Assembly: GCA_937625935.1 (NCBI GenBank)
Contig: OW569350.1
Coordinates: 558,001-622,000 of the forward strand
Direction of reading: 5' to 3'
From: Tetramitus jugosus
Lineage: Eukaryota; Protista; Heterolobosea
Length of the DNA: 64,000 nt
Of the stretch, positions 8,204 to 16,519 are shown piece after piece. Both the position numbers and the translations under genes were made by a program. The notes under the pieces were generated by a model. It was not told the origin of the DNA and did no database searches. It saw only the letters and a program-made list of their open reading frames with translations. How positions within the stretch are numbered: position 1 is the stretch's first letter; each line of letters begins with the position of its first letter.

Positions 8204-8354
8204 GATAGCACGTACATTCCAATAAAGCTGAAAGCAGCGAGGTTACCCAAACTCTTGAGTTCGGAAAAAACTTGTGGCACATAGAGAATTCAGCTTGGAA
8301 GCAATTGTTCGCATTTTTAGTGAACTTGTCCACACAATATTCACACAAACAAAC

Positions 8355-11300
8355 ATGTTGAGTAAGGCTGCTGCTTTCGGAAGTAAGACCAAAGAAGAGT
8401 TCAGACAGAACCATGATTTTCCTGAAGTGGTAGGCATGCTTGATGATAGTGATGATGAGATTGAAGAGATTGAAGAGATGGATGCACTAATGACTGGTGA
8501 TGATAGTACTGATGAAGAAGTAGATGATGAAATTTGTGTTGCAGAAATGGATGATGATGAGGAAGAAAGTGATGATGACACTGGTTCACAGACCGCGGAG
8601 AATGATGCACGGCTCAATATTATTTGGAAGAGAGATCCAGAGAGAGAAGGAGACAATGCTTTGGGTGTTTTTGTAATTGCTGGTCAAACCATTCCCAGGG
8701 ATATCTTTCATTCCATCATGTCATTTGTGCCAGCATATCCATTCTATTTCAATTTGAGATCAGTGTGCTCTCAATGGCTCTATGAATTTCAAGATGAAAT
8801 CTTTCCAAAGGTCACATACTTGAGTCTGGTGGACGATGGAAGGCCAAAATATTATTTCAAGGATAGTGGTCAGTTGGTTCAGTTCAAGCCACTAGGGGCA
8901 GCTGGAAAAGGATATCGATTGAGAGAACTTGGTGATGAGACCAAGTACTATGACAGGGCTCATATTTTTACGTTCTTGGCAACTGTGTTTCCCAATGTGA
9001 GGCATCTACGATTGGGAGTGGGTTCATGTATGAGACTCGGTGACTTCCATGATTGTGTGAGGACTTTGGTATCAAAGTTAACTCAACTGGAAACAGTTGA
9101 TGTTTTGGGCACTCGTTATTCGTACTTTAAGAGAAGTGATCAAGTTTCGTTAAGCGAAATTTCATTGTGCATCATTGCTCAGTCGTTGCCTATTTCGACC
9201 AAGACTCTCAATTTTATTGGCGTAACTCTTCAAGGTCCATTGAGTATGCTGAAGATCTTTTCAGAAAAGGGACGATCGCAAACAAATATGTCTGCGCTCA
9301 ATCGGTTGACACGAAACAACCCACGGCCGATTACTGTGGATGTTCAGCACTTAAGTTTGCCTTACATCATTTTGTGTGCCCAACCATCTATTGATTGGAC
9401 ACGCATCAAAGAAATGTACTTCCACTTTGAGGTATTAGTCGTGAAGTCAAGTAGGAATTCCTCCACTCCCATACAGGCTCCTGTTGCATCACATGTCGAT
9501 TACTTGAATTACATGTCGAAGAAGCAGGGAATTTTCTTATCACACATAGGAAAGCCTATGAAAGTAGATACTGATGAAACAATGGAAGCAACTATCGATA
9601 TTGCTGTTTCAGAGTATCCTCATTTCCAACCACTTCTCTCTCTACCTGAAACGAAAAAGGTTGCTCTACTCGCTACTCATACTAAATTGGACACAACTTT
9701 TGTTTGCAACAATGTGTCTACAGCAGCCAAAGCCTTGGAAGTGCTTACTGATCCCGAACGAATGAAATATCCAGAATTGGTATTGGATATCAATAGGACG
9801 TTTGAACAAGTCCGCTACCCCTTACCATGCACTCTCCTCACTATTTTGATCCAGAACTGTTCCAATGAAGCAGTAATTAGCTTGATTAAGACTATAGTAG
9901 AGAGGCACAAACCTTCTATGGCTGTTCATGGCGTTCAAAATTATCTTCTAGAGCTAATCATGAATCAACCATTTTCTCCTCTCAGAAGCAACATGATGAG
10001 ATATTTACTGTCTATTAGTCCAGAACTAATAGCTCTCGGAAACTCAGAAGGAGTTATTAACAATGACCAAAAAGATCTCCCTCTCATACAGCGGTTCCTC
10101 TCTCGACATTTGACTGCAGAGTGCTTGAAAGATCTCAAGTACTTGGTTGAAGCAGGAGCATCAATCACCCAAGTAGACCAAGATGGAAACAATATTCTTC
10201 ACTCTGCCTGTAAGATGGTGAACATGGATATAGTGAAGTACATTCTTTCGATATGTCCTGAGAGTTTTATGTTCGAAAGAAACAGGAAGGGCCAAACCCC
10301 CATCGAGTTAATTTACCCACCTAACTGGTGCCTCAATAATTCTGACATTAATGTCCAAGTTCAGTTCCTTCAAGAAGCTGCCAAGTTACCTTGCTTCAGT
10401 AAGCAAACGCTGCCAAGTTACCAAACATCACATGGCAATTTACTCCATGTTGCCTCTGAGAGTTCAGACATAGAAACAATCCAGTGGTTGCTGGAGAATG
10501 GTTTTGACGCCAACGCACTGAATGAGAAGGGAGAAAACGCCCTCTTCTATTCCAAAGTGAGTGGTCGAAGGAAGAAGCCTACAGGCAAGCAAAGTGCATT
10601 TGTGGATGACTGTGCCGCTGAATTAATCAAAGCAGGTGCGAAGGTTGATCTTGAAAACAACGAGGGAGGAACTCTTGTTATATCAGCTCTCCGTAACAAG
10701 AATTATGCGGTGATTAATATGATTATCCAGAAGCCATCGATATCCTCCAAACCATTGGCAGAGCTCTTGGGCCCAAGAGCGCCACAAGGGCTCAATGCAT
10801 TGCACTTTATTGTACAGAAGATGATCGAAACAACCGTTGCAAGGTCATTCACAGACATGGACAAAAAGATTGGTGTTTATCCTGTTGCACGACATTGTGC
10901 GCTTCTTTGCCTTGAGCACTATCCAGAAATGTTGTATGAGCGTTCTGAAGCAACAGAGGAGGATTTGAAAGATATTTCTGGTGTTAGTCCTCTTCAAATA
11001 TTGTTGAAGGCATCCAAAGGCTTACTCTTGTTGAAAGATTTATCGATCAAGCTGAGTGATATTGCCAACAAGCCCGTTTTTTCAGATTCAAGCAAGAACA
11101 AGGGTGATGTAGCTCCTATTCCCGTACTGTACCTCGCATTGGAGGTCGCATTGGACATCCCCATGTTCGACAAGTTGATGGACTGCACGAACAACGTACT
11201 AGTCAGAGATGAAACACAGGAAACAAAGCCCAATCTTTTACACATTGCTGCAGAAAGAGATGCTTCTCTAATTAAGTGTATTCTAAAGCACTGGAAGAAA

Positions 11301-12353
11301 AGGTTTACGAACAAGGAAGATTTATCAAAACTAATCAACCAGCCCCTAGAAAATGATACTGTCGGTGGGAGAAAGCCCAGAAATGCTGCATTACTTGCCT
11401 GGAGTCAATATTCCTTTGAGCGATTCTCTATACTCTGGTCGTTTATGAAGCCGTGTTCGTCACAGTTCGATTGTCCAGTTCAAATCGCCTTGGCAGAGAA
11501 GAAGTACTCATACGCCTTCTCTGCTGTCCAACAATTCGATATTATCCCATCCAAAGCTCAATTGCATCAGATGATTAGGAGCACCTTGGTTCAAGGAGCT
11601 GTTCACCAAACAAATGAGAGTAAGTTTGTTTCTCTTATGACTCAAACTGAAGAAGAGCAACCAACTCCATCATGGCTTCATTTGTTAATGCAAAACCCAT
11701 CTGAGGCAGTTGACTCCGAAGAACAGTGTGAGTTCAAGTCCTTGAGCACATTGCAACTTGTGGCGTCAGGGGTAGCGAGCTCCATATTCAACTGGTTAGT
11801 TCGCCACTACGGTGATGATCCAATGTTGAGTACTGCTGTCAAGGCTATTGACCCCCGCACAGGAAACACACTCTTGCACTTGCTGACAAGTGGTTCACAG
11901 AAACAAATCTCTGGGAAAGACTTATCCTCCATCCTCTACCCTATTGTTGATCAATTTAGAACGAAAGGAGTTGCACCAAAGCAAACAAAACAGATCAAGA
12001 CTAAGCCTCCCTCTCTTGATTACTTGAATACAAAAGAGTTGACAGAGTTCATCAATGCACAGAACAAGGGTGGTAGAACTTGTCTTCATAATGTCGCAGT
12101 GAACGATATTCAATCTGTTCTCCACGACCTGCTCGTTTATGGAGCTAATACAGAGATCAAGGATGTCTATGGTCAAACACCCTTGAAACTCATGGACAAT
12201 GATTCTGCGACCGCGGTTCAAAGGTTCTTGGAGATGCGAGATGGCAAAAAGCCTGAAAAGCAGAAGAGAAAGCTGAAACAGTCTTCCAACAGTGAAGAAG
12301 AAGTTGAGGAAACTGTCACTCGAAGAAAAAGAAGAAGAGTGACCAAAAAATAA
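8355..12353 (+). CDS. F-box + LRR-like + ankyrin-repeat protein
   Basis: F-box-like IPRDIFHSIMSFV...LRSVCSQW; ankyrin repeats DQDGNNILHSAC, GNLLHVAS, GNTLLHLL, GGRTCLHNVA, YGQTPL; basic NLS-like C-terminus; first ATG at 8355. Confidence 0.85.
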   Translation: MLSKAAAFGSKTKEEFRQNHDFPEVVGMLDDSDDEIEEIEEMDALMTGDDSTDEEVDDEICVAEMDDDEEESDDDTGSQTAENDARLNIIWKRDPEREGDNALGVFVIAGQTIPRDIFHSIMSFVPAYPFYFNLRSVCSQWLYEFQDEIFPKVTYLSLVDDGRPKYYFKDSGQLVQFKPLGAAGKGYRLRELGDETKYYDRAHIFTFLATVFPNVRHLRLGVGSCMRLGDFHDCVRTLVSKLTQLETVDVLGTRYSYFKRSDQVSLSEISLCIIAQSLPISTKTLNFIGVTLQGPLSMLKIFSEKGRSQTNMSALNRLTRNNPRPITVDVQHLSLPYIILCAQPSIDWTRIKEMYFHFEVLVVKSSRNSSTPIQAPVASHVDYLNYMSKKQGIFLSHIGKPMKVDTDETMEATIDIAVSEYPHFQPLLSLPETKKVALLATHTKLDTTFVCNNVSTAAKALEVLTDPERMKYPELVLDINRTFEQVRYPLPCTLLTILIQNCSNEAVISLIKTIVERHKPSMAVHGVQNYLLELIMNQPFSPLRSNMMRYLLSISPELIALGNSEGVINNDQKDLPLIQRFLSRHLTAECLKDLKYLVEAGASITQVDQDGNNILHSACKMVNMDIVKYILSICPESFMFERNRKGQTPIELIYPPNWCLNNSDINVQVQFLQEAAKLPCFSKQTLPSYQTSHGNLLHVASESSDIETIQWLLENGFDANALNEKGENALFYSKVSGRRKKPTGKQSAFVDDCAAELIKAGAKVDLENNEGGTLVISALRNKNYAVINMIIQKPSISSKPLAELLGPRAPQGLNALHFIVQKMIETTVARSFTDMDKKIGVYPVARHCALLCLEHYPEMLYERSEATEEDLKDISGVSPLQILLKASKGLLLLKDLSIKLSDIANKPVFSDSSKNKGDVAPIPVLYLALEVALDIPMFDKLMDCTNNVLVRDETQETKPNLLHIAAERDASLIKCILKHWKKRFTNKEDLSKLINQPLENDTVGGRKPRNAALLAWSQYSFERFSILWSFMKPCSSQFDCPVQIALAEKKYSYAFSAVQQFDIIPSKAQLHQMIRSTLVQGAVHQTNESKFVSLMTQTEEEQPTPSWLHLLMQNPSEAVDSEEQCEFKSLSTLQLVASGVASSIFNWLVRHYGDDPMLSTAVKAIDPRTGNTLLHLLTSGSQKQISGKDLSSILYPIVDQFRTKGVAPKQTKQIKTKPPSLDYLNTKELTEFINAQNKGGRTCLHNVAVNDIQSVLHDLLVYGANTEIKDVYGQTPLKLMDNDSATAVQRFLEMRDGKKPEKQKRKLKQSSNSEEEVEETVTRRKRRRVTKK

Positions 12354-12541: not shown

Positions 12542-13324
12542 ATGAAACGATCCTTTCACTCTGCCTTCCAACCTGTCATGTGCTTATCTGATGGATGTGA
12601 TTCATTCATCATGAGTCATCCAACAGTCTATTTTAACCACCACAGTACTACTCCATCAACAACAACAATGAGTACAACTCAAAACAATCATCATCATTTC
12701 AACAACCAACAATCATCATTTGATCAGCATCAAATGGTTGAGGACAATGAAAATGTTCCTCCTCCTCATCCACTTTACAAGAGAACAAAACTCTCATCCA
12801 AACCATCACATGTCATGACAAACAATGGATATTGTATCCGAAATTTTCATGTTGATCTGAACAAGAACAACAATAACAATAATAATAATAATAGCAACGA
12901 AACAACAAGAGTGGATTCGTGGGACTATAGCAATACGAGTCATGTTCAGCACTTGAACTTTTTGAAAACTTTTGCAAGCTCAAGTACTACTGCTGGTAGT
13001 AGCAGCAGTGGCAATGCGAGTCAATCGAGACAAAATATGAATAATAACTACAACAACAATACTATTGCTGATCAAATTCTCATGTACTTGACAGTTTGTA
13101 CAATGAATGGCAAGAAGATGATTGTTGCACTCAACAGGCAGGAAGCAACCGTGTATGATCTAAAGCAGAGCATTCTTCGGAAGATGAATATGGCACCTGA
13201 CAAGCAGATTTTGTTGTTTGAAGGCAGACCTCTGAATGATTTGTCACTCAACCTGTATCATCAATGTCATCTGAGAACGGGTCATGCGATCCAGATCATC
13301 AGCCCCATGAATTATCAGCCATGA
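12542..13324 (+). CDS. Low-complexity N-terminus plus C-terminal ubiquitin-like domain
   Basis: MYLTVCTMNGKK...TVYDLKQSI...APDKQILLFEGRPLND matches the ubiquitin fold; no C-terminal GG. Confidence 0.8.
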   Translation: MKRSFHSAFQPVMCLSDGCDSFIMSHPTVYFNHHSTTPSTTTMSTTQNNHHHFNNQQSSFDQHQMVEDNENVPPPHPLYKRTKLSSKPSHVMTNNGYCIRNFHVDLNKNNNNNNNNNSNETTRVDSWDYSNTSHVQHLNFLKTFASSSTTAGSSSSGNASQSRQNMNNNYNNNTIADQILMYLTVCTMNGKKMIVALNRQEATVYDLKQSILRKMNMAPDKQILLFEGRPLNDLSLNLYHQCHLRTGHAIQIISPMNYQP

Positions 13325-13383: not shown

Positions 13384-15144
13384 TTATTGTGAAACTTCGG
13401 AGATGAGTGGTTGACCCACTCTAACCTTTTGTCCACTCTTTACACAAAATTGCAGATCCATATCATCTGGTGCTTCAAAGATCAAGACAACAGTAGAACC
13501 AAGCTTAAACTTGGCCACTTCTTCTCCTCTCTGCACATTCATTCCACTGGGGAAGATACGGTCGTGAGTGTAAGTTCTATTTGGACAACGTTGCTCAAGA
13601 TCGGCATCTGGATTCTCTGGTACCTTTGGAACAAAGGATGAAATTCTGTGTGGCTTCTCATTCGTGACAACTTGTTGATCAAAATTGAGTTCAATACTGC
13701 CAACATTGTAGGCACCAACAGCTGACAATGAGAAGAAGTACTTTTCTTGTTGTTGGTCTAGTTCTTGATCAGAGACAGTCTTAGCATTCCATGTTCCCTC
13801 AATCACAACTCTCTCATTGACAGCAAACAGACCCTTAATGTGCTTCACAAACACAGGATTCACAGGCAACAAAGCACCAGGGAAGTGCTTTCTTCTGTTG
13901 ATTGTCCAATCAGCAGAACTGTGAATTCTGTGATAATCACCAGGTGCCAAATAAATGACACACTGGTACAAGCTAGTCTTCTTCTTAGTTGGTTGTTGTT
14001 GATCGTCGTCATACAAGTTGCTTCTCTTTCCCAAGAATGATCTGAATGAATAGTTCAATCCCTTGACGTGAGTAATGACTGGTTCGTTCAGCTTTTCACG
14101 ACCATTCTCAACTCTTGTGCAGCTATATACAGTTCCATCGACTGGAGAAACCAATGGAATGGTTGGATGAACAGGTCTCATATCATCCTTCAATGGTCTA
14201 GAGAAGAAATCACCTAGGCAACGATAGGACTTTAGTGGATATCTCATCTCATCCAAATTACACTTGAAGGCAATGGTCCATGCCATGTACATTGGTTCTC
14301 TGGCCCAGACAGGGAGTGTAATGTGATGGAATTTTCCCCAAATGTAAGAAGCAATGTTCCAAGGCAACAAATAGAGCAACCTTTCATGAGTAATGTCAGA
14401 GGAAAAGCTCTCAGTCTCTTGTTCCTTTGTCTTCATCTTGGATATAGTAGCAGTGCTATTGCTACTACTACTACCACTCTCTCTTGTCAAATAGTAGACC
14501 ATGGGAGTCAACAGAGAAGCCAATGTCATGGTAGAGCTAAGCACAACTGTGGAGGAACCAGTCAAAAAGTACAACACGGCTGCCATCATTGTACAAATCA
14601 TGACAATCAACAAGCCACAAGTCATCCATCTGTTTGCACTTCTTGTCTCGTTATTACTAGGTTTGCTATCATTGATCAAGTCATCCTCTTCATGGTTGAT
14701 TTTGTTGTGCGCTCGTCTGTCGGATTTCACCGTAGTGGATGTCGGAGTATTAGCTGAGGCACCCCTGATGCGATGAACACAAATTTCACTATTGAGCTGA
14801 GACATGATGACCTTTAGATTTTTCAAGCTCTCATCAACCATTGTCTGACACTCATCAGACAATTGACTCACATGCTTTTTCCATTTTTTTACAATTTTTT
14901 CAGTGCTCGTCACATTGAGATAACAATATTGATGAATGTGATGCAATTGCTCAGTAGTTGATTGTTGTTCATTCATCATCTTGACACTGTTGAACACGAG
15001 AGACAATTGTTCAGTGAGTGAACACTCAAACTGTGCACTACTGTCCTTGGTGACGAGTGACTTTAGAGATTTGTAGTTGATGTAGGGTCTGAGGGACAAG
15101 TCTTCTTCACTGACATTGCGCCTCCAAAATTTATTCCACTTCAT
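13384..15144 (-). CDS. Phosphatidylserine decarboxylase with an N-terminal SPX-like domain and a TM segment
   Basis: PSD motifs FFSRPLK, SPVDG, YLAPGDYHRIHS, NERV, VGAYNVGSI and the autocleavage motif FKLGSTVVL. N-terminal MKW..YINYKSLK and LNVTSTEKIVKKWKK resemble SPX motifs. Confidence 0.92.
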   Translation of the reverse strand: MKWNKFWRRNVSEEDLSLRPYINYKSLKSLVTKDSSAQFECSLTEQLSLVFNSVKMMNEQQSTTEQLHHIHQYCYLNVTSTEKIVKKWKKHVSQLSDECQTMVDESLKNLKVIMSQLNSEICVHRIRGASANTPTSTTVKSDRRAHNKINHEEDDLINDSKPSNNETRSANRWMTCGLLIVMICTMMAAVLYFLTGSSTVVLSSTMTLASLLTPMVYYLTRESGSSSSNSTATISKMKTKEQETESFSSDITHERLLYLLPWNIASYIWGKFHHITLPVWAREPMYMAWTIAFKCNLDEMRYPLKSYRCLGDFFSRPLKDDMRPVHPTIPLVSPVDGTVYSCTRVENGREKLNEPVITHVKGLNYSFRSFLGKRSNLYDDDQQQPTKKKTSLYQCVIYLAPGDYHRIHSSADWTINRRKHFPGALLPVNPVFVKHIKGLFAVNERVVIEGTWNAKTVSDQELDQQQEKYFFSLSAVGAYNVGSIELNFDQQVVTNEKPHRISSFVPKVPENPDADLEQRCPNRTYTHDRIFPSGMNVQRGEEVAKFKLGSTVVLIFEAPDDMDLQFCVKSGQKVRVGQPLISEVSQ

Positions 15145-15658: not shown

Positions 15659-16519
15659 ATGACAGAATATCCTTTTGACATCTCAAGGGCACGTGAAACT
15701 GCAATCGAAGCCGCACTAGAAGCAGGAAAGCTCATTTGCTCAGCACTTTTGAACCATACTGAGCAAACGATGAAGACAAAGTCTACTACGACAGATTTGG
15801 TCACAGAAACTGATGAAATGTGTGACCGTGTCATTATTGAGCGATTGAAGCGGGATTTTCCAGAGTTTGACATCATATCGGAAGAAACATATAACACCGC
15901 ATCGGAGTTGAGTGAAAAGCCGACTTGGGTCATTGACCCCATTGATGGAACAACCAATTTTGTTCACAGAAATCCCGCTGTAGCTGTGTCGATTGGACTG
16001 ACGTATGCAAAGCAATGCGTGTTGGGTGTGATTGTGTTGCCAATGATGAAAGAGACCTATGTAGCAATCAAGGGACAAGGAGCTTTCAAGACTGATATCC
16101 ATCATGATCAACCATTCCAAATTTCTGTGAGCTCGAATCGCACATTGGACACGAGTCTACTGAGCAGCAACTTTCCTTATGCGAGAGGCAATGAATCACT
16201 GGATCCTGTTCACTCACGGTACAATGCACTGCTCAAGAGTGGTGTAAGAGGTATTAGAGGCTCTGGCAGTGCTTGTGTCAATCTTGTTCAAGTGGCTTGT
16301 GGTGCCTTGGAAGGATACTTTGAAAATGGTTTGCAGAGTTGGGATATGGCAGCAGGAAAGGTGATTGTGGAAGAGGCTGGAGGTGTTGTTTTGGATGTTG
16401 ATGCTTCACCAATCGATATCATGAAGAGAAGAATCTTGGCATGCAACAGTATGGAGCTGGCAACGCAAATCAGTCAAGTGCTCGTTCAATCCGATCAAAA
16501 ATTTGCCACAAACTTGTAA
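15659..16519 (+). CDS. Inositol monophosphatase (IMPA/SuhB family)
   Basis: DLVTETD, ISEE, WVIDPIDGTTNF, GSAC and WDMAAG signatures. Confidence 0.95.
   Translation: MTEYPFDISRARETAIEAALEAGKLICSALLNHTEQTMKTKSTTTDLVTETDEMCDRVIIERLKRDFPEFDIISEETYNTASELSEKPTWVIDPIDGTTNFVHRNPAVAVSIGLTYAKQCVLGVIVLPMMKETYVAIKGQGAFKTDIHHDQPFQISVSSNRTLDTSLLSSNFPYARGNESLDPVHSRYNALLKSGVRGIRGSGSACVNLVQVACGALEGYFENGLQSWDMAAGKVIVEEAGGVVLDVDASPIDIMKRRILACNSMELATQISQVLVQSDQKFATNL

What the first reader, a model, noticed from the sequence alone, without database searches (positions are those of the whole stretch)
13384..15144. SPX domain fused to phosphatidylserine decarboxylase
Seen: the N-terminus has MKWNKFW...YINYKSLK and YLNVTSTEKIVKKWKK. 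These match the SPX hallmarks MKFGK..YxxYKxLKK and LNxxGFxKIxKKxDK that form the inositol-pyrophosphate-binding basic surface. A TM hairpin and a complete PSD with LGST follow, in one uninterrupted ORF. Established: SPX is known fused to EXS, MFS, RING, VTC, ankyrin/GDPD and phosphate transporters; I do not recall an SPX-PSD fusion. Inference: PE synthesis placed under direct phosphate/InsP7-8 control, probably outside the mitochondrion since SPX occupies the place of a presequence. The SPX here is shorter than canonical.
Basis: partly seen in the sequence, partly recalled or inferred. Interest (0 to 1): 0.8.

Follow-up and report, generated by a model that had tools for sequence, protein, structure and literature searches.

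The report
Compact SPX sensor fused to PS decarboxylase
A single gene in this small protist genome joins a real but unusually short phosphate-signal sensor (SPX domain) through a membrane hairpin to a complete enzyme that makes the membrane lipid phosphatidylethanolamine, a combination I found in no paper and in only one narrow group of relatives.

Summary
Window 13384-15144 (minus strand) is one uninterrupted 586-aa ORF with five parts:
- a 131-aa helical N-domain
- a disordered linker
- a two-helix hydrophobic hairpin
- a second linker
- a complete type-I phosphatidylserine decarboxylase (Pfam E 4e-49, LGST site)

The N-domain is a genuine but compact SPX domain.
- Pfam SPX stays below its cut-off (15-26 bits against 27.8), so databases do not label it.
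- A profile of the four orthologues significantly hits four proteins that are Pfam-SPX-positive. The iterated profile then hits every solved SPX structure (best E 3e-16).
- The 15 best structural matches of the AlphaFold model are all SPX domains (Z 9.6-11.4).
- All six residues that bind inositol (pyro)phosphate in yeast Vtc4 are present and invariant.

The genome also holds a second, canonical PSD with a presequence-like N-terminus and one membrane helix. This supports, but does not show, a non-matrix, cytosol-facing location for the fusion.

The fusion is rare. It forms one 50%-identity cluster among 1.84 billion representatives. A nested relative has lost the SPX part.

Regulation of the enzyme by inositol pyrophosphate is inferred, not shown. 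No RNA evidence could be obtained.

The scan had noted this same stretch before, not other DNA.

The parts
13384..15144 (-). Whole SPX-hairpin-PSD coding sequence, 586 aa plus stop
   Evidence: Uninterrupted ORF. Full-length orthologues have the same layout: P0001/P0121 at 96%, P0002 at 58% and P0003/P0122 at 60% identity.
14752..15144 (-). Compact SPX domain, aa 1-131. Helices at 3-10, 13-18, 24-32, 36-59, 64-91 and 97-131.
   Evidence: AlphaFold pLDDT 82.5. VIA-align top 15 hits are all SPX, Z 9.6-11.4, rmsd about 3 A over 121-140 residues. Foldseek top hit is 5ijj. The profile hits Pfam-positive SPX proteins. The iterated profile hits PDB SPX structures at E 3e-16. Pfam SPX itself is sub-threshold.
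15061..15075 (-). Helix alpha-2 motif YKSLK. Y24 and K28 correspond to Vtc4 Y22 and K26 of the phosphate-binding cluster.
   Evidence: Invariant in all eight sequences of alignment A5. Residue roles come from PMC9911596.
14875..14898 (-). Helix alpha-4 lysine motif KIVKKWKK. K83, K86, K87 and K90 correspond to Vtc4 K129, K132, K133 and K136.
   Evidence: HMMER alignment to Vtc4 chains 5iit_A and 8i6v_E. Invariant in A2, A3 and A5. Residue roles come from PMC9911596.
14641..14751 (-). Disordered, poorly conserved linker, aa 132-168
   Evidence: pLDDT below 50. Variable in length and sequence between orthologues, always in frame.
14476..14640 (-). Two-helix hydrophobic hairpin, aa 169-223
   Evidence: AlphaFold helices 169-195 and 198-223. 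Hydropathy peaks are 2.49 and 1.36 in the window and 2.4-2.6 for both segments in P0002 and P0003.
14395..14475 (-). Ser/Thr-rich disordered linker, aa 224-250
   Evidence: pLDDT below 50.
13387..14394 (-). Type-I phosphatidylserine decarboxylase domain, aa 251-586
   Evidence: PF02666 E 4.2e-49. D336, H405, H408, G549, S550 and T551 are invariant across 52 PSDs. pLDDT is about 90.
13492..13503 (-). LGST self-cleavage and pyruvoyl-forming site, aa 548-551
   Evidence: Direct translation. G549, S550 and T551 are invariant and L548 nearly invariant.
15659..16519 (+). Divergently oriented neighbour gene, an inositol monophosphatase, 514 bp from the SPX-PSD start. Context only, not part of the protein.
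   Evidence: PF00459 E 6.6e-71. Its 75%-identical orthologue lies 1.7 kb from the PSD orthologue in L016.

Best explanation
This gene encodes one membrane protein. A compact but complete SPX domain (aa 1-131) is tethered by a disordered linker and a two-helix membrane hairpin to a catalytically complete type-I phosphatidylserine decarboxylase. Because the hairpin crosses the membrane twice, or dips in and returns, the SPX domain and the catalytic domain lie on the same side. SPX domains are cytosolic sensors, so that side is most likely the cytosol, on a non-matrix membrane. I infer that the SPX basic surface (Y24, K28, K83, K86, K87, K90) binds InsP6, InsP7 or InsP8. I further infer that ligand binding changes how SPX sits against the decarboxylase or its partner subunit, so that conversion of PS to PE follows cellular phosphate status. 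Shown here: domain identities, fold, conserved ligand residues, one ORF in four lineages, and a separate canonical PSD paralogue. Inferred: ligand binding, direction of regulation, topology and location.
For: PSD part:
- PF02666 E 4e-49.
- LGST and the invariant Asp, His and Ser are present.

SPX part:
- The profile of the 4 orthologues, searched against 1.84 billion representatives, gives only 6 hits. Four of them (P0125, P0127, P0128, P0129; E 3.8e-7 to 5.8e-4) are Pfam SPX above the gathering score. They include an SPX-Ank-GDPD and an SPX-HAD protein.
- The iterated profile hits all solved SPX structures, 5ijj at E 3.3e-16 over the full length.
- The un-iterated profile already gave SPX chains as 9 of its 10 best PDB hits.
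- The AlphaFold model has pLDDT 82.5. Foldseek's top hits are SPX. VIA ranks 1-15 are all SPX, Z 9.6-11.4. The ESM Atlas top hit is an SPX-MFS cluster, TM 0.64.
- The six Vtc4 PBC/KSC residues (PMC9911596) are invariant.

One gene:
- The ORF is continuous, with the same MKWNKF start, in four lineages whose synonymous sites are saturated.

Location and signalling context:
- The hairpin is supported.
- A second PSD on contig C33 has no acidic residue in its first 60 aa and a single membrane helix. The fusion has 7 acidic residues in its first 60 aa.
- The genome encodes canonical SPX proteins, an IPK-family kinase and a PPIP5K N-domain.
Against: - Pfam SPX never reaches its gathering score on any orthologue (best 25.9 against 27.8 bits).
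- The fold Z-scores lie in a range where helical bundles can match by arrangement alone (note).
- A nested relative, P0004, works without the SPX part, so the sensor is dispensable in evolution.
- No ligand binding, topology, location or regulatory effect was measured.
- The second hairpin helix is only moderately hydrophobic in the window protein (1.36).
Confidence: 0.6

Rival explanations
1. The N-domain descends from SPX but no longer senses inositol phosphates. It serves as a structural, oligomerisation or targeting module for a membrane-anchored PSD.
For: It is much shorter than canonical SPX domains and scores below the Pfam cut-off. The P0004 lineage has dispensed with it. No binding data exist.
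Against: All six ligand-contact residues, and K2, are invariant in four lineages in which only 42 of 128 SPX positions are invariant and synonymous sites are saturated. An eroded sensor would be expected to lose some of these lysines.
Confidence: 0.2
2. The SPX domain senses inositol pyrophosphate but acts in trans. It recruits or releases another protein at the membrane, as plant SPX1 does with PHR factors, and does not change PSD catalysis.
For: Stand-alone SPX proteins work this way (PDB entry 7e40, seen). The two long disordered linkers leave the SPX domain free to move.
Against: The covalent fusion has been kept in three divergent lineages. In the other enzyme or transporter fusions (Vtc4, XPR1, Pho90) SPX regulates the attached module; this point is from established knowledge and PMC9911596.
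Confidence: 0.12
3. The fusion is an annotation illusion. The ORF is open, but the cell makes only a shorter PSD from an internal start, for example near the hairpin, or the 5' part is untranslated.
For: No transcript data could be obtained. P0004 and P0005 start close to the hairpin.
Against: The first ATG and the following MKWNKF are identical in four lineages. The frame stays open through linkers that vary in length. The domain folds with high confidence and keeps functional residues. Untranslated sequence would not stay this way at saturated synonymous divergence.
Confidence: 0.05

Closest known systems
Gde1-type glycerophosphodiesterase (SPX-ankyrin-GDPD; SPX structure 5ijj)
   Same: An N-terminal SPX domain attached to an enzyme of phospholipid head-group metabolism. 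5ijj is the best sequence and fold match. P0128, a compact-SPX protein of this architecture, is one of the few significant sequence hits.
   Different: Gde1 is soluble and breaks down glycerophosphodiesters. Here the output is a membrane-anchored, pyruvoyl-dependent decarboxylase that synthesises PE. There are no ankyrin repeats, and the SPX domain is about 45 residues shorter.
Yeast Vtc4 (SPX-TTM-TM polyphosphate polymerase)
   Same: An SPX domain regulates an attached catalytic domain on a membrane protein. The PBC residues Y22, K26, K133 and KSC residues K129, K132, K136 all have counterparts here.
   Different: The output enzyme and pathway differ. Vtc4 SPX is longer (about 180 aa) and works inside a hetero-oligomeric complex.
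Mitochondrial Psd1 / PISD (type-I PSD)
   Same: The catalytic domain is of the same type: LGST motif, best hits named 'proenzyme, mitochondrial', 35-45% identity.
   Different: Psd1 has a cleavable presequence and one inner-membrane anchor. This protein has an SPX domain and a two-helix hairpin instead. The same genome keeps a Psd1-like paralogue on contig C33.
Psd2 and plant PSD2/PSD3 (type-II, non-mitochondrial PSDs with regulatory N-terminal domains)
   Same: By analogy, a PSD outside the mitochondrial matrix that carries an N-terminal regulatory or targeting domain.
   Different: From established knowledge, type-II enzymes have a GGST site and C2 or EF-hand-type modules. Here the site is LGST, Pfam finds no C2 domain, and the tree places the protein among type-I sequences.
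XPR1 / PHO1 (SPX-EXS phosphate exporters)
   Same: An N-terminal SPX domain on a membrane protein. XPR1 SPX structures are among the top fold matches. The genome has its own SPX-EXS gene.
   Different: The output there is a transporter, not an enzyme, and the SPX domain is canonical in length.

Membership tests
SPX domain (Pfam PF03105) | Score at or above the Pfam gathering cut-off (27.8 bits) | tested here: not met
   15.2 bits on the whole protein, 21.6 on aa 1-125, and at best 25.9 on P0002:1-150. Only the alpha-4 region aligns.
SPX domain (Pfam PF03105) | Statistically significant sequence homology to accepted members | tested here: met
   The profile of the 4 orthologues hits P0125, P0127, P0128 and P0129 at E 3.8e-7 to 5.8e-4 in 1.84 billion proteins. 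All four are Pfam SPX above the cut-off. The iterated profile hits solved SPX domains at E 3e-16 to 1e-6.
SPX domain (Pfam PF03105) | Domain starts at residue 1, with the MK(F/W)xK helix and the alpha-2 Y..LK motif | tested here: met
   MKWNKF and YINYKSLK are present. M1, Y21, Y24, K25, L27 and K28 are invariant in A5.
SPX domain (Pfam PF03105) | Phosphate-binding cluster and lysine surface cluster (Vtc4 Y22, K26, K133; K129, K132, K136) | tested here: met
   The counterparts Y24, K28, K87 and K83, K86, K90 follow from the HMMER alignment to Vtc4. They are invariant. Residue roles come from PMC9911596.
SPX domain (Pfam PF03105) | SPX fold: N-terminal helical hairpin packed on a long helical bundle | tested here: met
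   The model has pLDDT 82.5. VIA ranks 1-15 are all SPX; the best is 5ijj_A at Z 11.4, rmsd 2.9 A over 122 residues spanning model residues 2-133. Z values of this size are not decisive for helical bundles taken alone.
SPX domain (Pfam PF03105) | Binds InsP6 or PP-InsP | not testable with these tools
   Needs ITC or a similar assay on purified protein.
Phosphatidylserine decarboxylase, type I (PF02666) | Pfam score above the cut-off over the whole domain | tested here: met
   167.4 bits, E 4.2e-49, profile positions 2-197 of 198.
Phosphatidylserine decarboxylase, type I (PF02666) | LGST self-cleavage motif and conserved Asp, His and Ser | tested here: met
   LGST at aa 548-551. D336, H405, H408 and S550 are invariant in 52 sequences.
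Phosphatidylserine decarboxylase, type I (PF02666) | Self-processing to alpha and beta chains with a pyruvoyl group; PS decarboxylation | not testable with these tools
   Needs a biochemical assay.
Mitochondrial Psd1 subtype | N-terminal matrix-targeting presequence followed by a single inner-membrane anchor | tested here: not met
   The first 60 aa hold 7 acidic residues and fold as SPX, and there are two hydrophobic helices. The C33 paralogue has 0 acidic residues in its first 60 aa and one helix.
Type-II PSD (Psd2-like) | GGST site and C2-type N-terminal domains | tested here: not met
   The site is LGST. No C2 or other Pfam domain is found. The protein groups with type-I sequences.

The most novel reading that the evidence does not exclude
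Inositol pyrophosphate binding to the fused compact SPX domain directly switches the self-processing or catalysis of a cytosol-facing type-I PSD. This would be the first case of the eukaryotic phosphate-status signal acting directly on a phospholipid-synthesis enzyme, and a minimal (about 130 aa) SPX sensor useful as a model.
Probability: 0.4. Interest if true: 0.75.

Novelty: new variant of a known kind. Interest (0 to 1): 0.62.

Why it matters
SPX domains are the receptors through which eukaryotes read phosphate status from inositol pyrophosphates. Their known outputs are phosphate transporters, the polyphosphate polymerase, transcription-factor inhibitors, a ubiquitin ligase and a glycerophosphodiesterase. 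A fusion to phosphatidylserine decarboxylase would add de novo synthesis of a major membrane phospholipid to that list. It would do so as a single polypeptide that can be expressed and assayed.

It also shows two other things. A type-I, mitochondrial-type PSD has been re-deployed with a new anchor and a new N-terminal module. And sub-threshold compact SPX domains escape routine annotation, so other hidden SPX fusions may exist; two candidates turned up here.

The limits are that the fusion occurs in only a narrow group of little-known protists, and that no function was measured.

Tried and rejected
- A single-sequence phmmer search of aa 1-175 against PDB sequences gave nothing meaningful.
- The word-indexed protein search restricted to aa 1-135 returned only the 96% orthologue.
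- An hhalign comparison of the 4-sequence profile with an alignment of the genome's own four SPX proteins aligned only helix alpha-4, at probability 14.7%. Both profiles are too shallow, and the genome's own SPX proteins carry long low-complexity inserts.
- dN/dS per region was uninformative. The close pair differs at too few sites, and the distant pairs are saturated at synonymous sites.
I therefore did not use read laying and have no expression evidence.
- The ESM Atlas feature search returned only ordinary PSD clusters.
- Searches for the accession of the P0004 assembly found no paper.
- I did not identify the organism. The PSD tree places the clade nearest to dictyostelid and unnamed protist sequences.
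- A hidden upstream SPX exon in the P0004 locus was considered and rejected. tblastn finds no N-domain in the 3.2 kb upstream, and another gene occupies that space.
- A mitochondrial presequence reading of the N-terminus was rejected on composition and fold.

Full report
**What is in the sequence**

Window 13384-15144 holds, on the minus strand, one ATG-initiated ORF of 586 aa. The surrounding window is compact and rich in long ORFs, with GC about 0.41. It belongs to a 26.35-Mb assembly in 56 contigs. This looks like an intron-poor unicellular eukaryote. I could not name the organism.

**The decarboxylase part**

Pfam PS_Dcarbxylase matches aa 311-581 at E 4.2e-49, covering profile positions 2-197 of 198. 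In an alignment of 52 PSDs, D336, H405, H408, G549, S550 and T551 are invariant and L548 is nearly so.

The nearest named relatives are annotated as mitochondrial PSD proenzymes, at 35-45% identity. The site is LGST rather than the GGST of type-II enzymes; that distinction is from established knowledge. The enzyme part is therefore a complete type-I PSD.

**Is the N-domain an SPX domain?**

- Pfam SPX matches only helix alpha-4 and stays under its gathering score of 27.8 bits. It gives 15.2 bits on the whole protein, 21.6 on aa 1-125, and at best 25.9 on an orthologue. This explains why the public copies are labelled PSD only.
- A 4-sequence profile of the orthologous N-domains already placed SPX chains in 9 of its 10 best PDB hits, though at weak E-values of 0.02-0.4. 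The N-terminal motif and the alpha-4 motif aligned in the correct order.
- The same kind of profile (A3) was searched against 1.84 billion representatives and returned only six proteins at E 0.001 or better. These were its own cluster, one low-complexity protein, and four others: P0125, P0127, P0128 and P0129, at E 3.8e-7 to 5.8e-4.
- All four of those are Pfam SPX above the cut-off. P0128 is an SPX-ankyrin-GDPD protein and P0129 an SPX-HAD protein.
- Adding the four to the profile gives full-length matches to every solved SPX domain. Examples are 5ijj at 3.3e-16, CtVtc4 at 3.5e-11, rice SPX1 at 6.7e-11 and XPR1 at about 1e-9.

This is a standard two-step transitive homology argument, and I regard membership as established.

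**Fold**

AlphaFold on the four N-domains gives a confident helical model: pLDDT 82.5, with helices 3-10, 13-18, 24-32, 36-59, 64-91 and 97-131.
- Foldseek ranks SPX structures first, with 5ijj at E 0.019.
- On re-alignment the 15 best chains are all SPX domains, Z 9.6-11.4. The best match, 5ijj_A, has rmsd 2.9 A over 122 residues spanning model residues 2-133. The first unrelated bundle, CorA, comes at Z 9.5.
- The best ESM Atlas match is an SPX-MFS cluster, TM 0.64 over 133 residues.

Such Z values alone would not be decisive for a helical bundle. Here they agree with the sequence evidence.

**Ligand residues**

In yeast Vtc4 the phosphate-binding cluster is Y22, K26, K133 and the lysine surface cluster is K129, K132, K136. 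Mutating them reduces InsP6-stimulated activity (PMC9911596).

By the HMMER alignment to Vtc4 and the alpha-2 motif, the counterparts here are Y24, K28, K87 and K83, K86, K90. All six, and K2, are invariant in the four orthologues. Y24, K28, K83, K86, K87 and K90 are also invariant after adding the four accepted SPX proteins.

Across these lineages only 42 of 128 SPX positions are invariant and synonymous sites are saturated. The domain is short because helices alpha-3 and alpha-4 are shorter than usual and there is no variable insert. No core element is missing.

**Linkers and hairpin**

A full-length model shows five segments:
- SPX
- a disordered stretch, 132-167
- two helices, 169-195 and 198-223, separated by two residues
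- a second disordered stretch, 226-250
- the PSD fold

Hydropathy peaks are 2.49 and 1.36 in the window protein and 2.4-2.6 for both segments in P0002 and P0003. A hairpin puts the N-domain and the enzyme on the same side of the membrane. That topology is an inference from the model, not a measurement.

**One gene or two?**

Full-length orthologues with the same start (MKWNKF) and the same order of parts occur in metagenome and Logan contigs:
- P0001 and P0121, 96% identity
- P0002, 58%
- P0003 and P0122, 60%

The linkers vary in length between them, always in frame. This argues strongly for one coding sequence.

**Distribution and history**

In a quick maximum-likelihood tree, the window protein, P0001, P0004, P0002 and P0003 form a fully supported clade. 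P0004 comes from NCBI assembly GCA_037189345.1 and is 71-75% identical in the enzyme part. It sits beside the window protein (support 89), yet it lacks the SPX domain and the first hairpin helix. Its locus has no SPX-like sequence in the 3.2 kb upstream, where another gene lies. I read this as secondary loss.

P0005, the sister lineage, has the hairpin but no SPX. The simplest history is a hairpin-anchored PSD that gained SPX once and lost it once.

Only one 50%-identity cluster in the representative library carries this N-domain. No paper in the library pairs SPX with PSD, apart from one incidental co-mention. I could not run an InterPro-style architecture query, so fusions of PSD with a canonical SPX domain elsewhere are not excluded.

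**Context in the genome**

The genome has exactly two PSD matches. The other one, on contig C33, is 540 aa. It has no acidic residue in its first 60 aa and one hydrophobic helix, as expected of a mitochondrial Psd1. The fusion has 7 acidic residues in its first 60 aa.

The genome also encodes canonical SPX proteins, including an SPX-EXS protein, an IPK-family kinase and a PPIP5K N-domain. Inositol pyrophosphate signalling is therefore plausibly present.

**Mechanism**

My preferred reading is as follows. The basic surface of the compact SPX domain binds InsP6, InsP7 or InsP8 in the cytosol. Binding repositions the domain relative to the membrane-anchored PSD or its dimer partner. PS-to-PE conversion on a non-matrix membrane thereby follows phosphate status, while the C33 enzyme covers the mitochondrial pathway.

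By analogy with Vtc4 and XPR1 I would guess that ligand binding activates, but the direction is open. The steps shown and the steps inferred are listed under the best explanation.

Rivals are a non-sensing SPX relic, an SPX that acts in trans on another protein, and an internal start that bypasses SPX. I weight these at about 0.2, 0.12 and 0.05.

**Verdict**

This is a new domain architecture within two well-known families. It is restricted to a narrow protist clade, and its function is untested.

Noticed in passing
window 15659-16519 (+); L016:3431-4327: An inositol monophosphatase gene (PF00459, E 6.6e-71) lies head-to-head with the SPX-PSD gene, 514 bp apart. Its 75%-identical orthologue lies 1.7 kb from the PSD orthologue in a species 60% identical, but on the other side and two genes away. 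This could be residual synteny or co-regulation of inositol and phospholipid genes.
   Followed up: partly
G000:C33:115738-116721 (L003:904-2526): A second PSD gene, 540 aa, with a presequence-like N-terminus and one membrane helix. It is probably the canonical mitochondrial enzyme. It sits on a long branch in the PSD tree.
   Followed up: partly
L001:3208-4557 (P0004, NCBI GCA_037189345.1): The closest non-identical relative of the enzyme part lacks the SPX domain and half of the first hairpin helix. An endonuclease/exonuclease/phosphatase-like gene lies upstream on the other strand.
   Followed up: yes
proteins P0129 (364 aa) and P0127 (317 aa, Phyllostaurus siculus transcriptome): Other compact SPX domains are fused to unusual partners. 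One is an SPX-HAD hydrolase, named phosphoglycolate phosphatase by its source. The other is an SPX followed by hydrophobic segments and a weak Exo_endo_phos match.
   Followed up: no
L005, L006, L008 (G000 contigs C35, C7:427 kb, C37): The genome's canonical SPX proteins carry long low-complexity inserts between helices alpha-2 and alpha-3. L005 is an SPX-EXS protein.
   Followed up: partly
window 12542-13324 (+): A 260-aa protein with a C-terminal ubiquitin-family domain converges on the PSD gene, with only 59 bp between the stop codons. The same convergent pair is kept in the P0122 loci.
   Followed up: partly
window 8274-12353 (+): A very long ORF of 1359 aa with an acidic N-terminal stretch. 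I did not analyse it.
   Followed up: no
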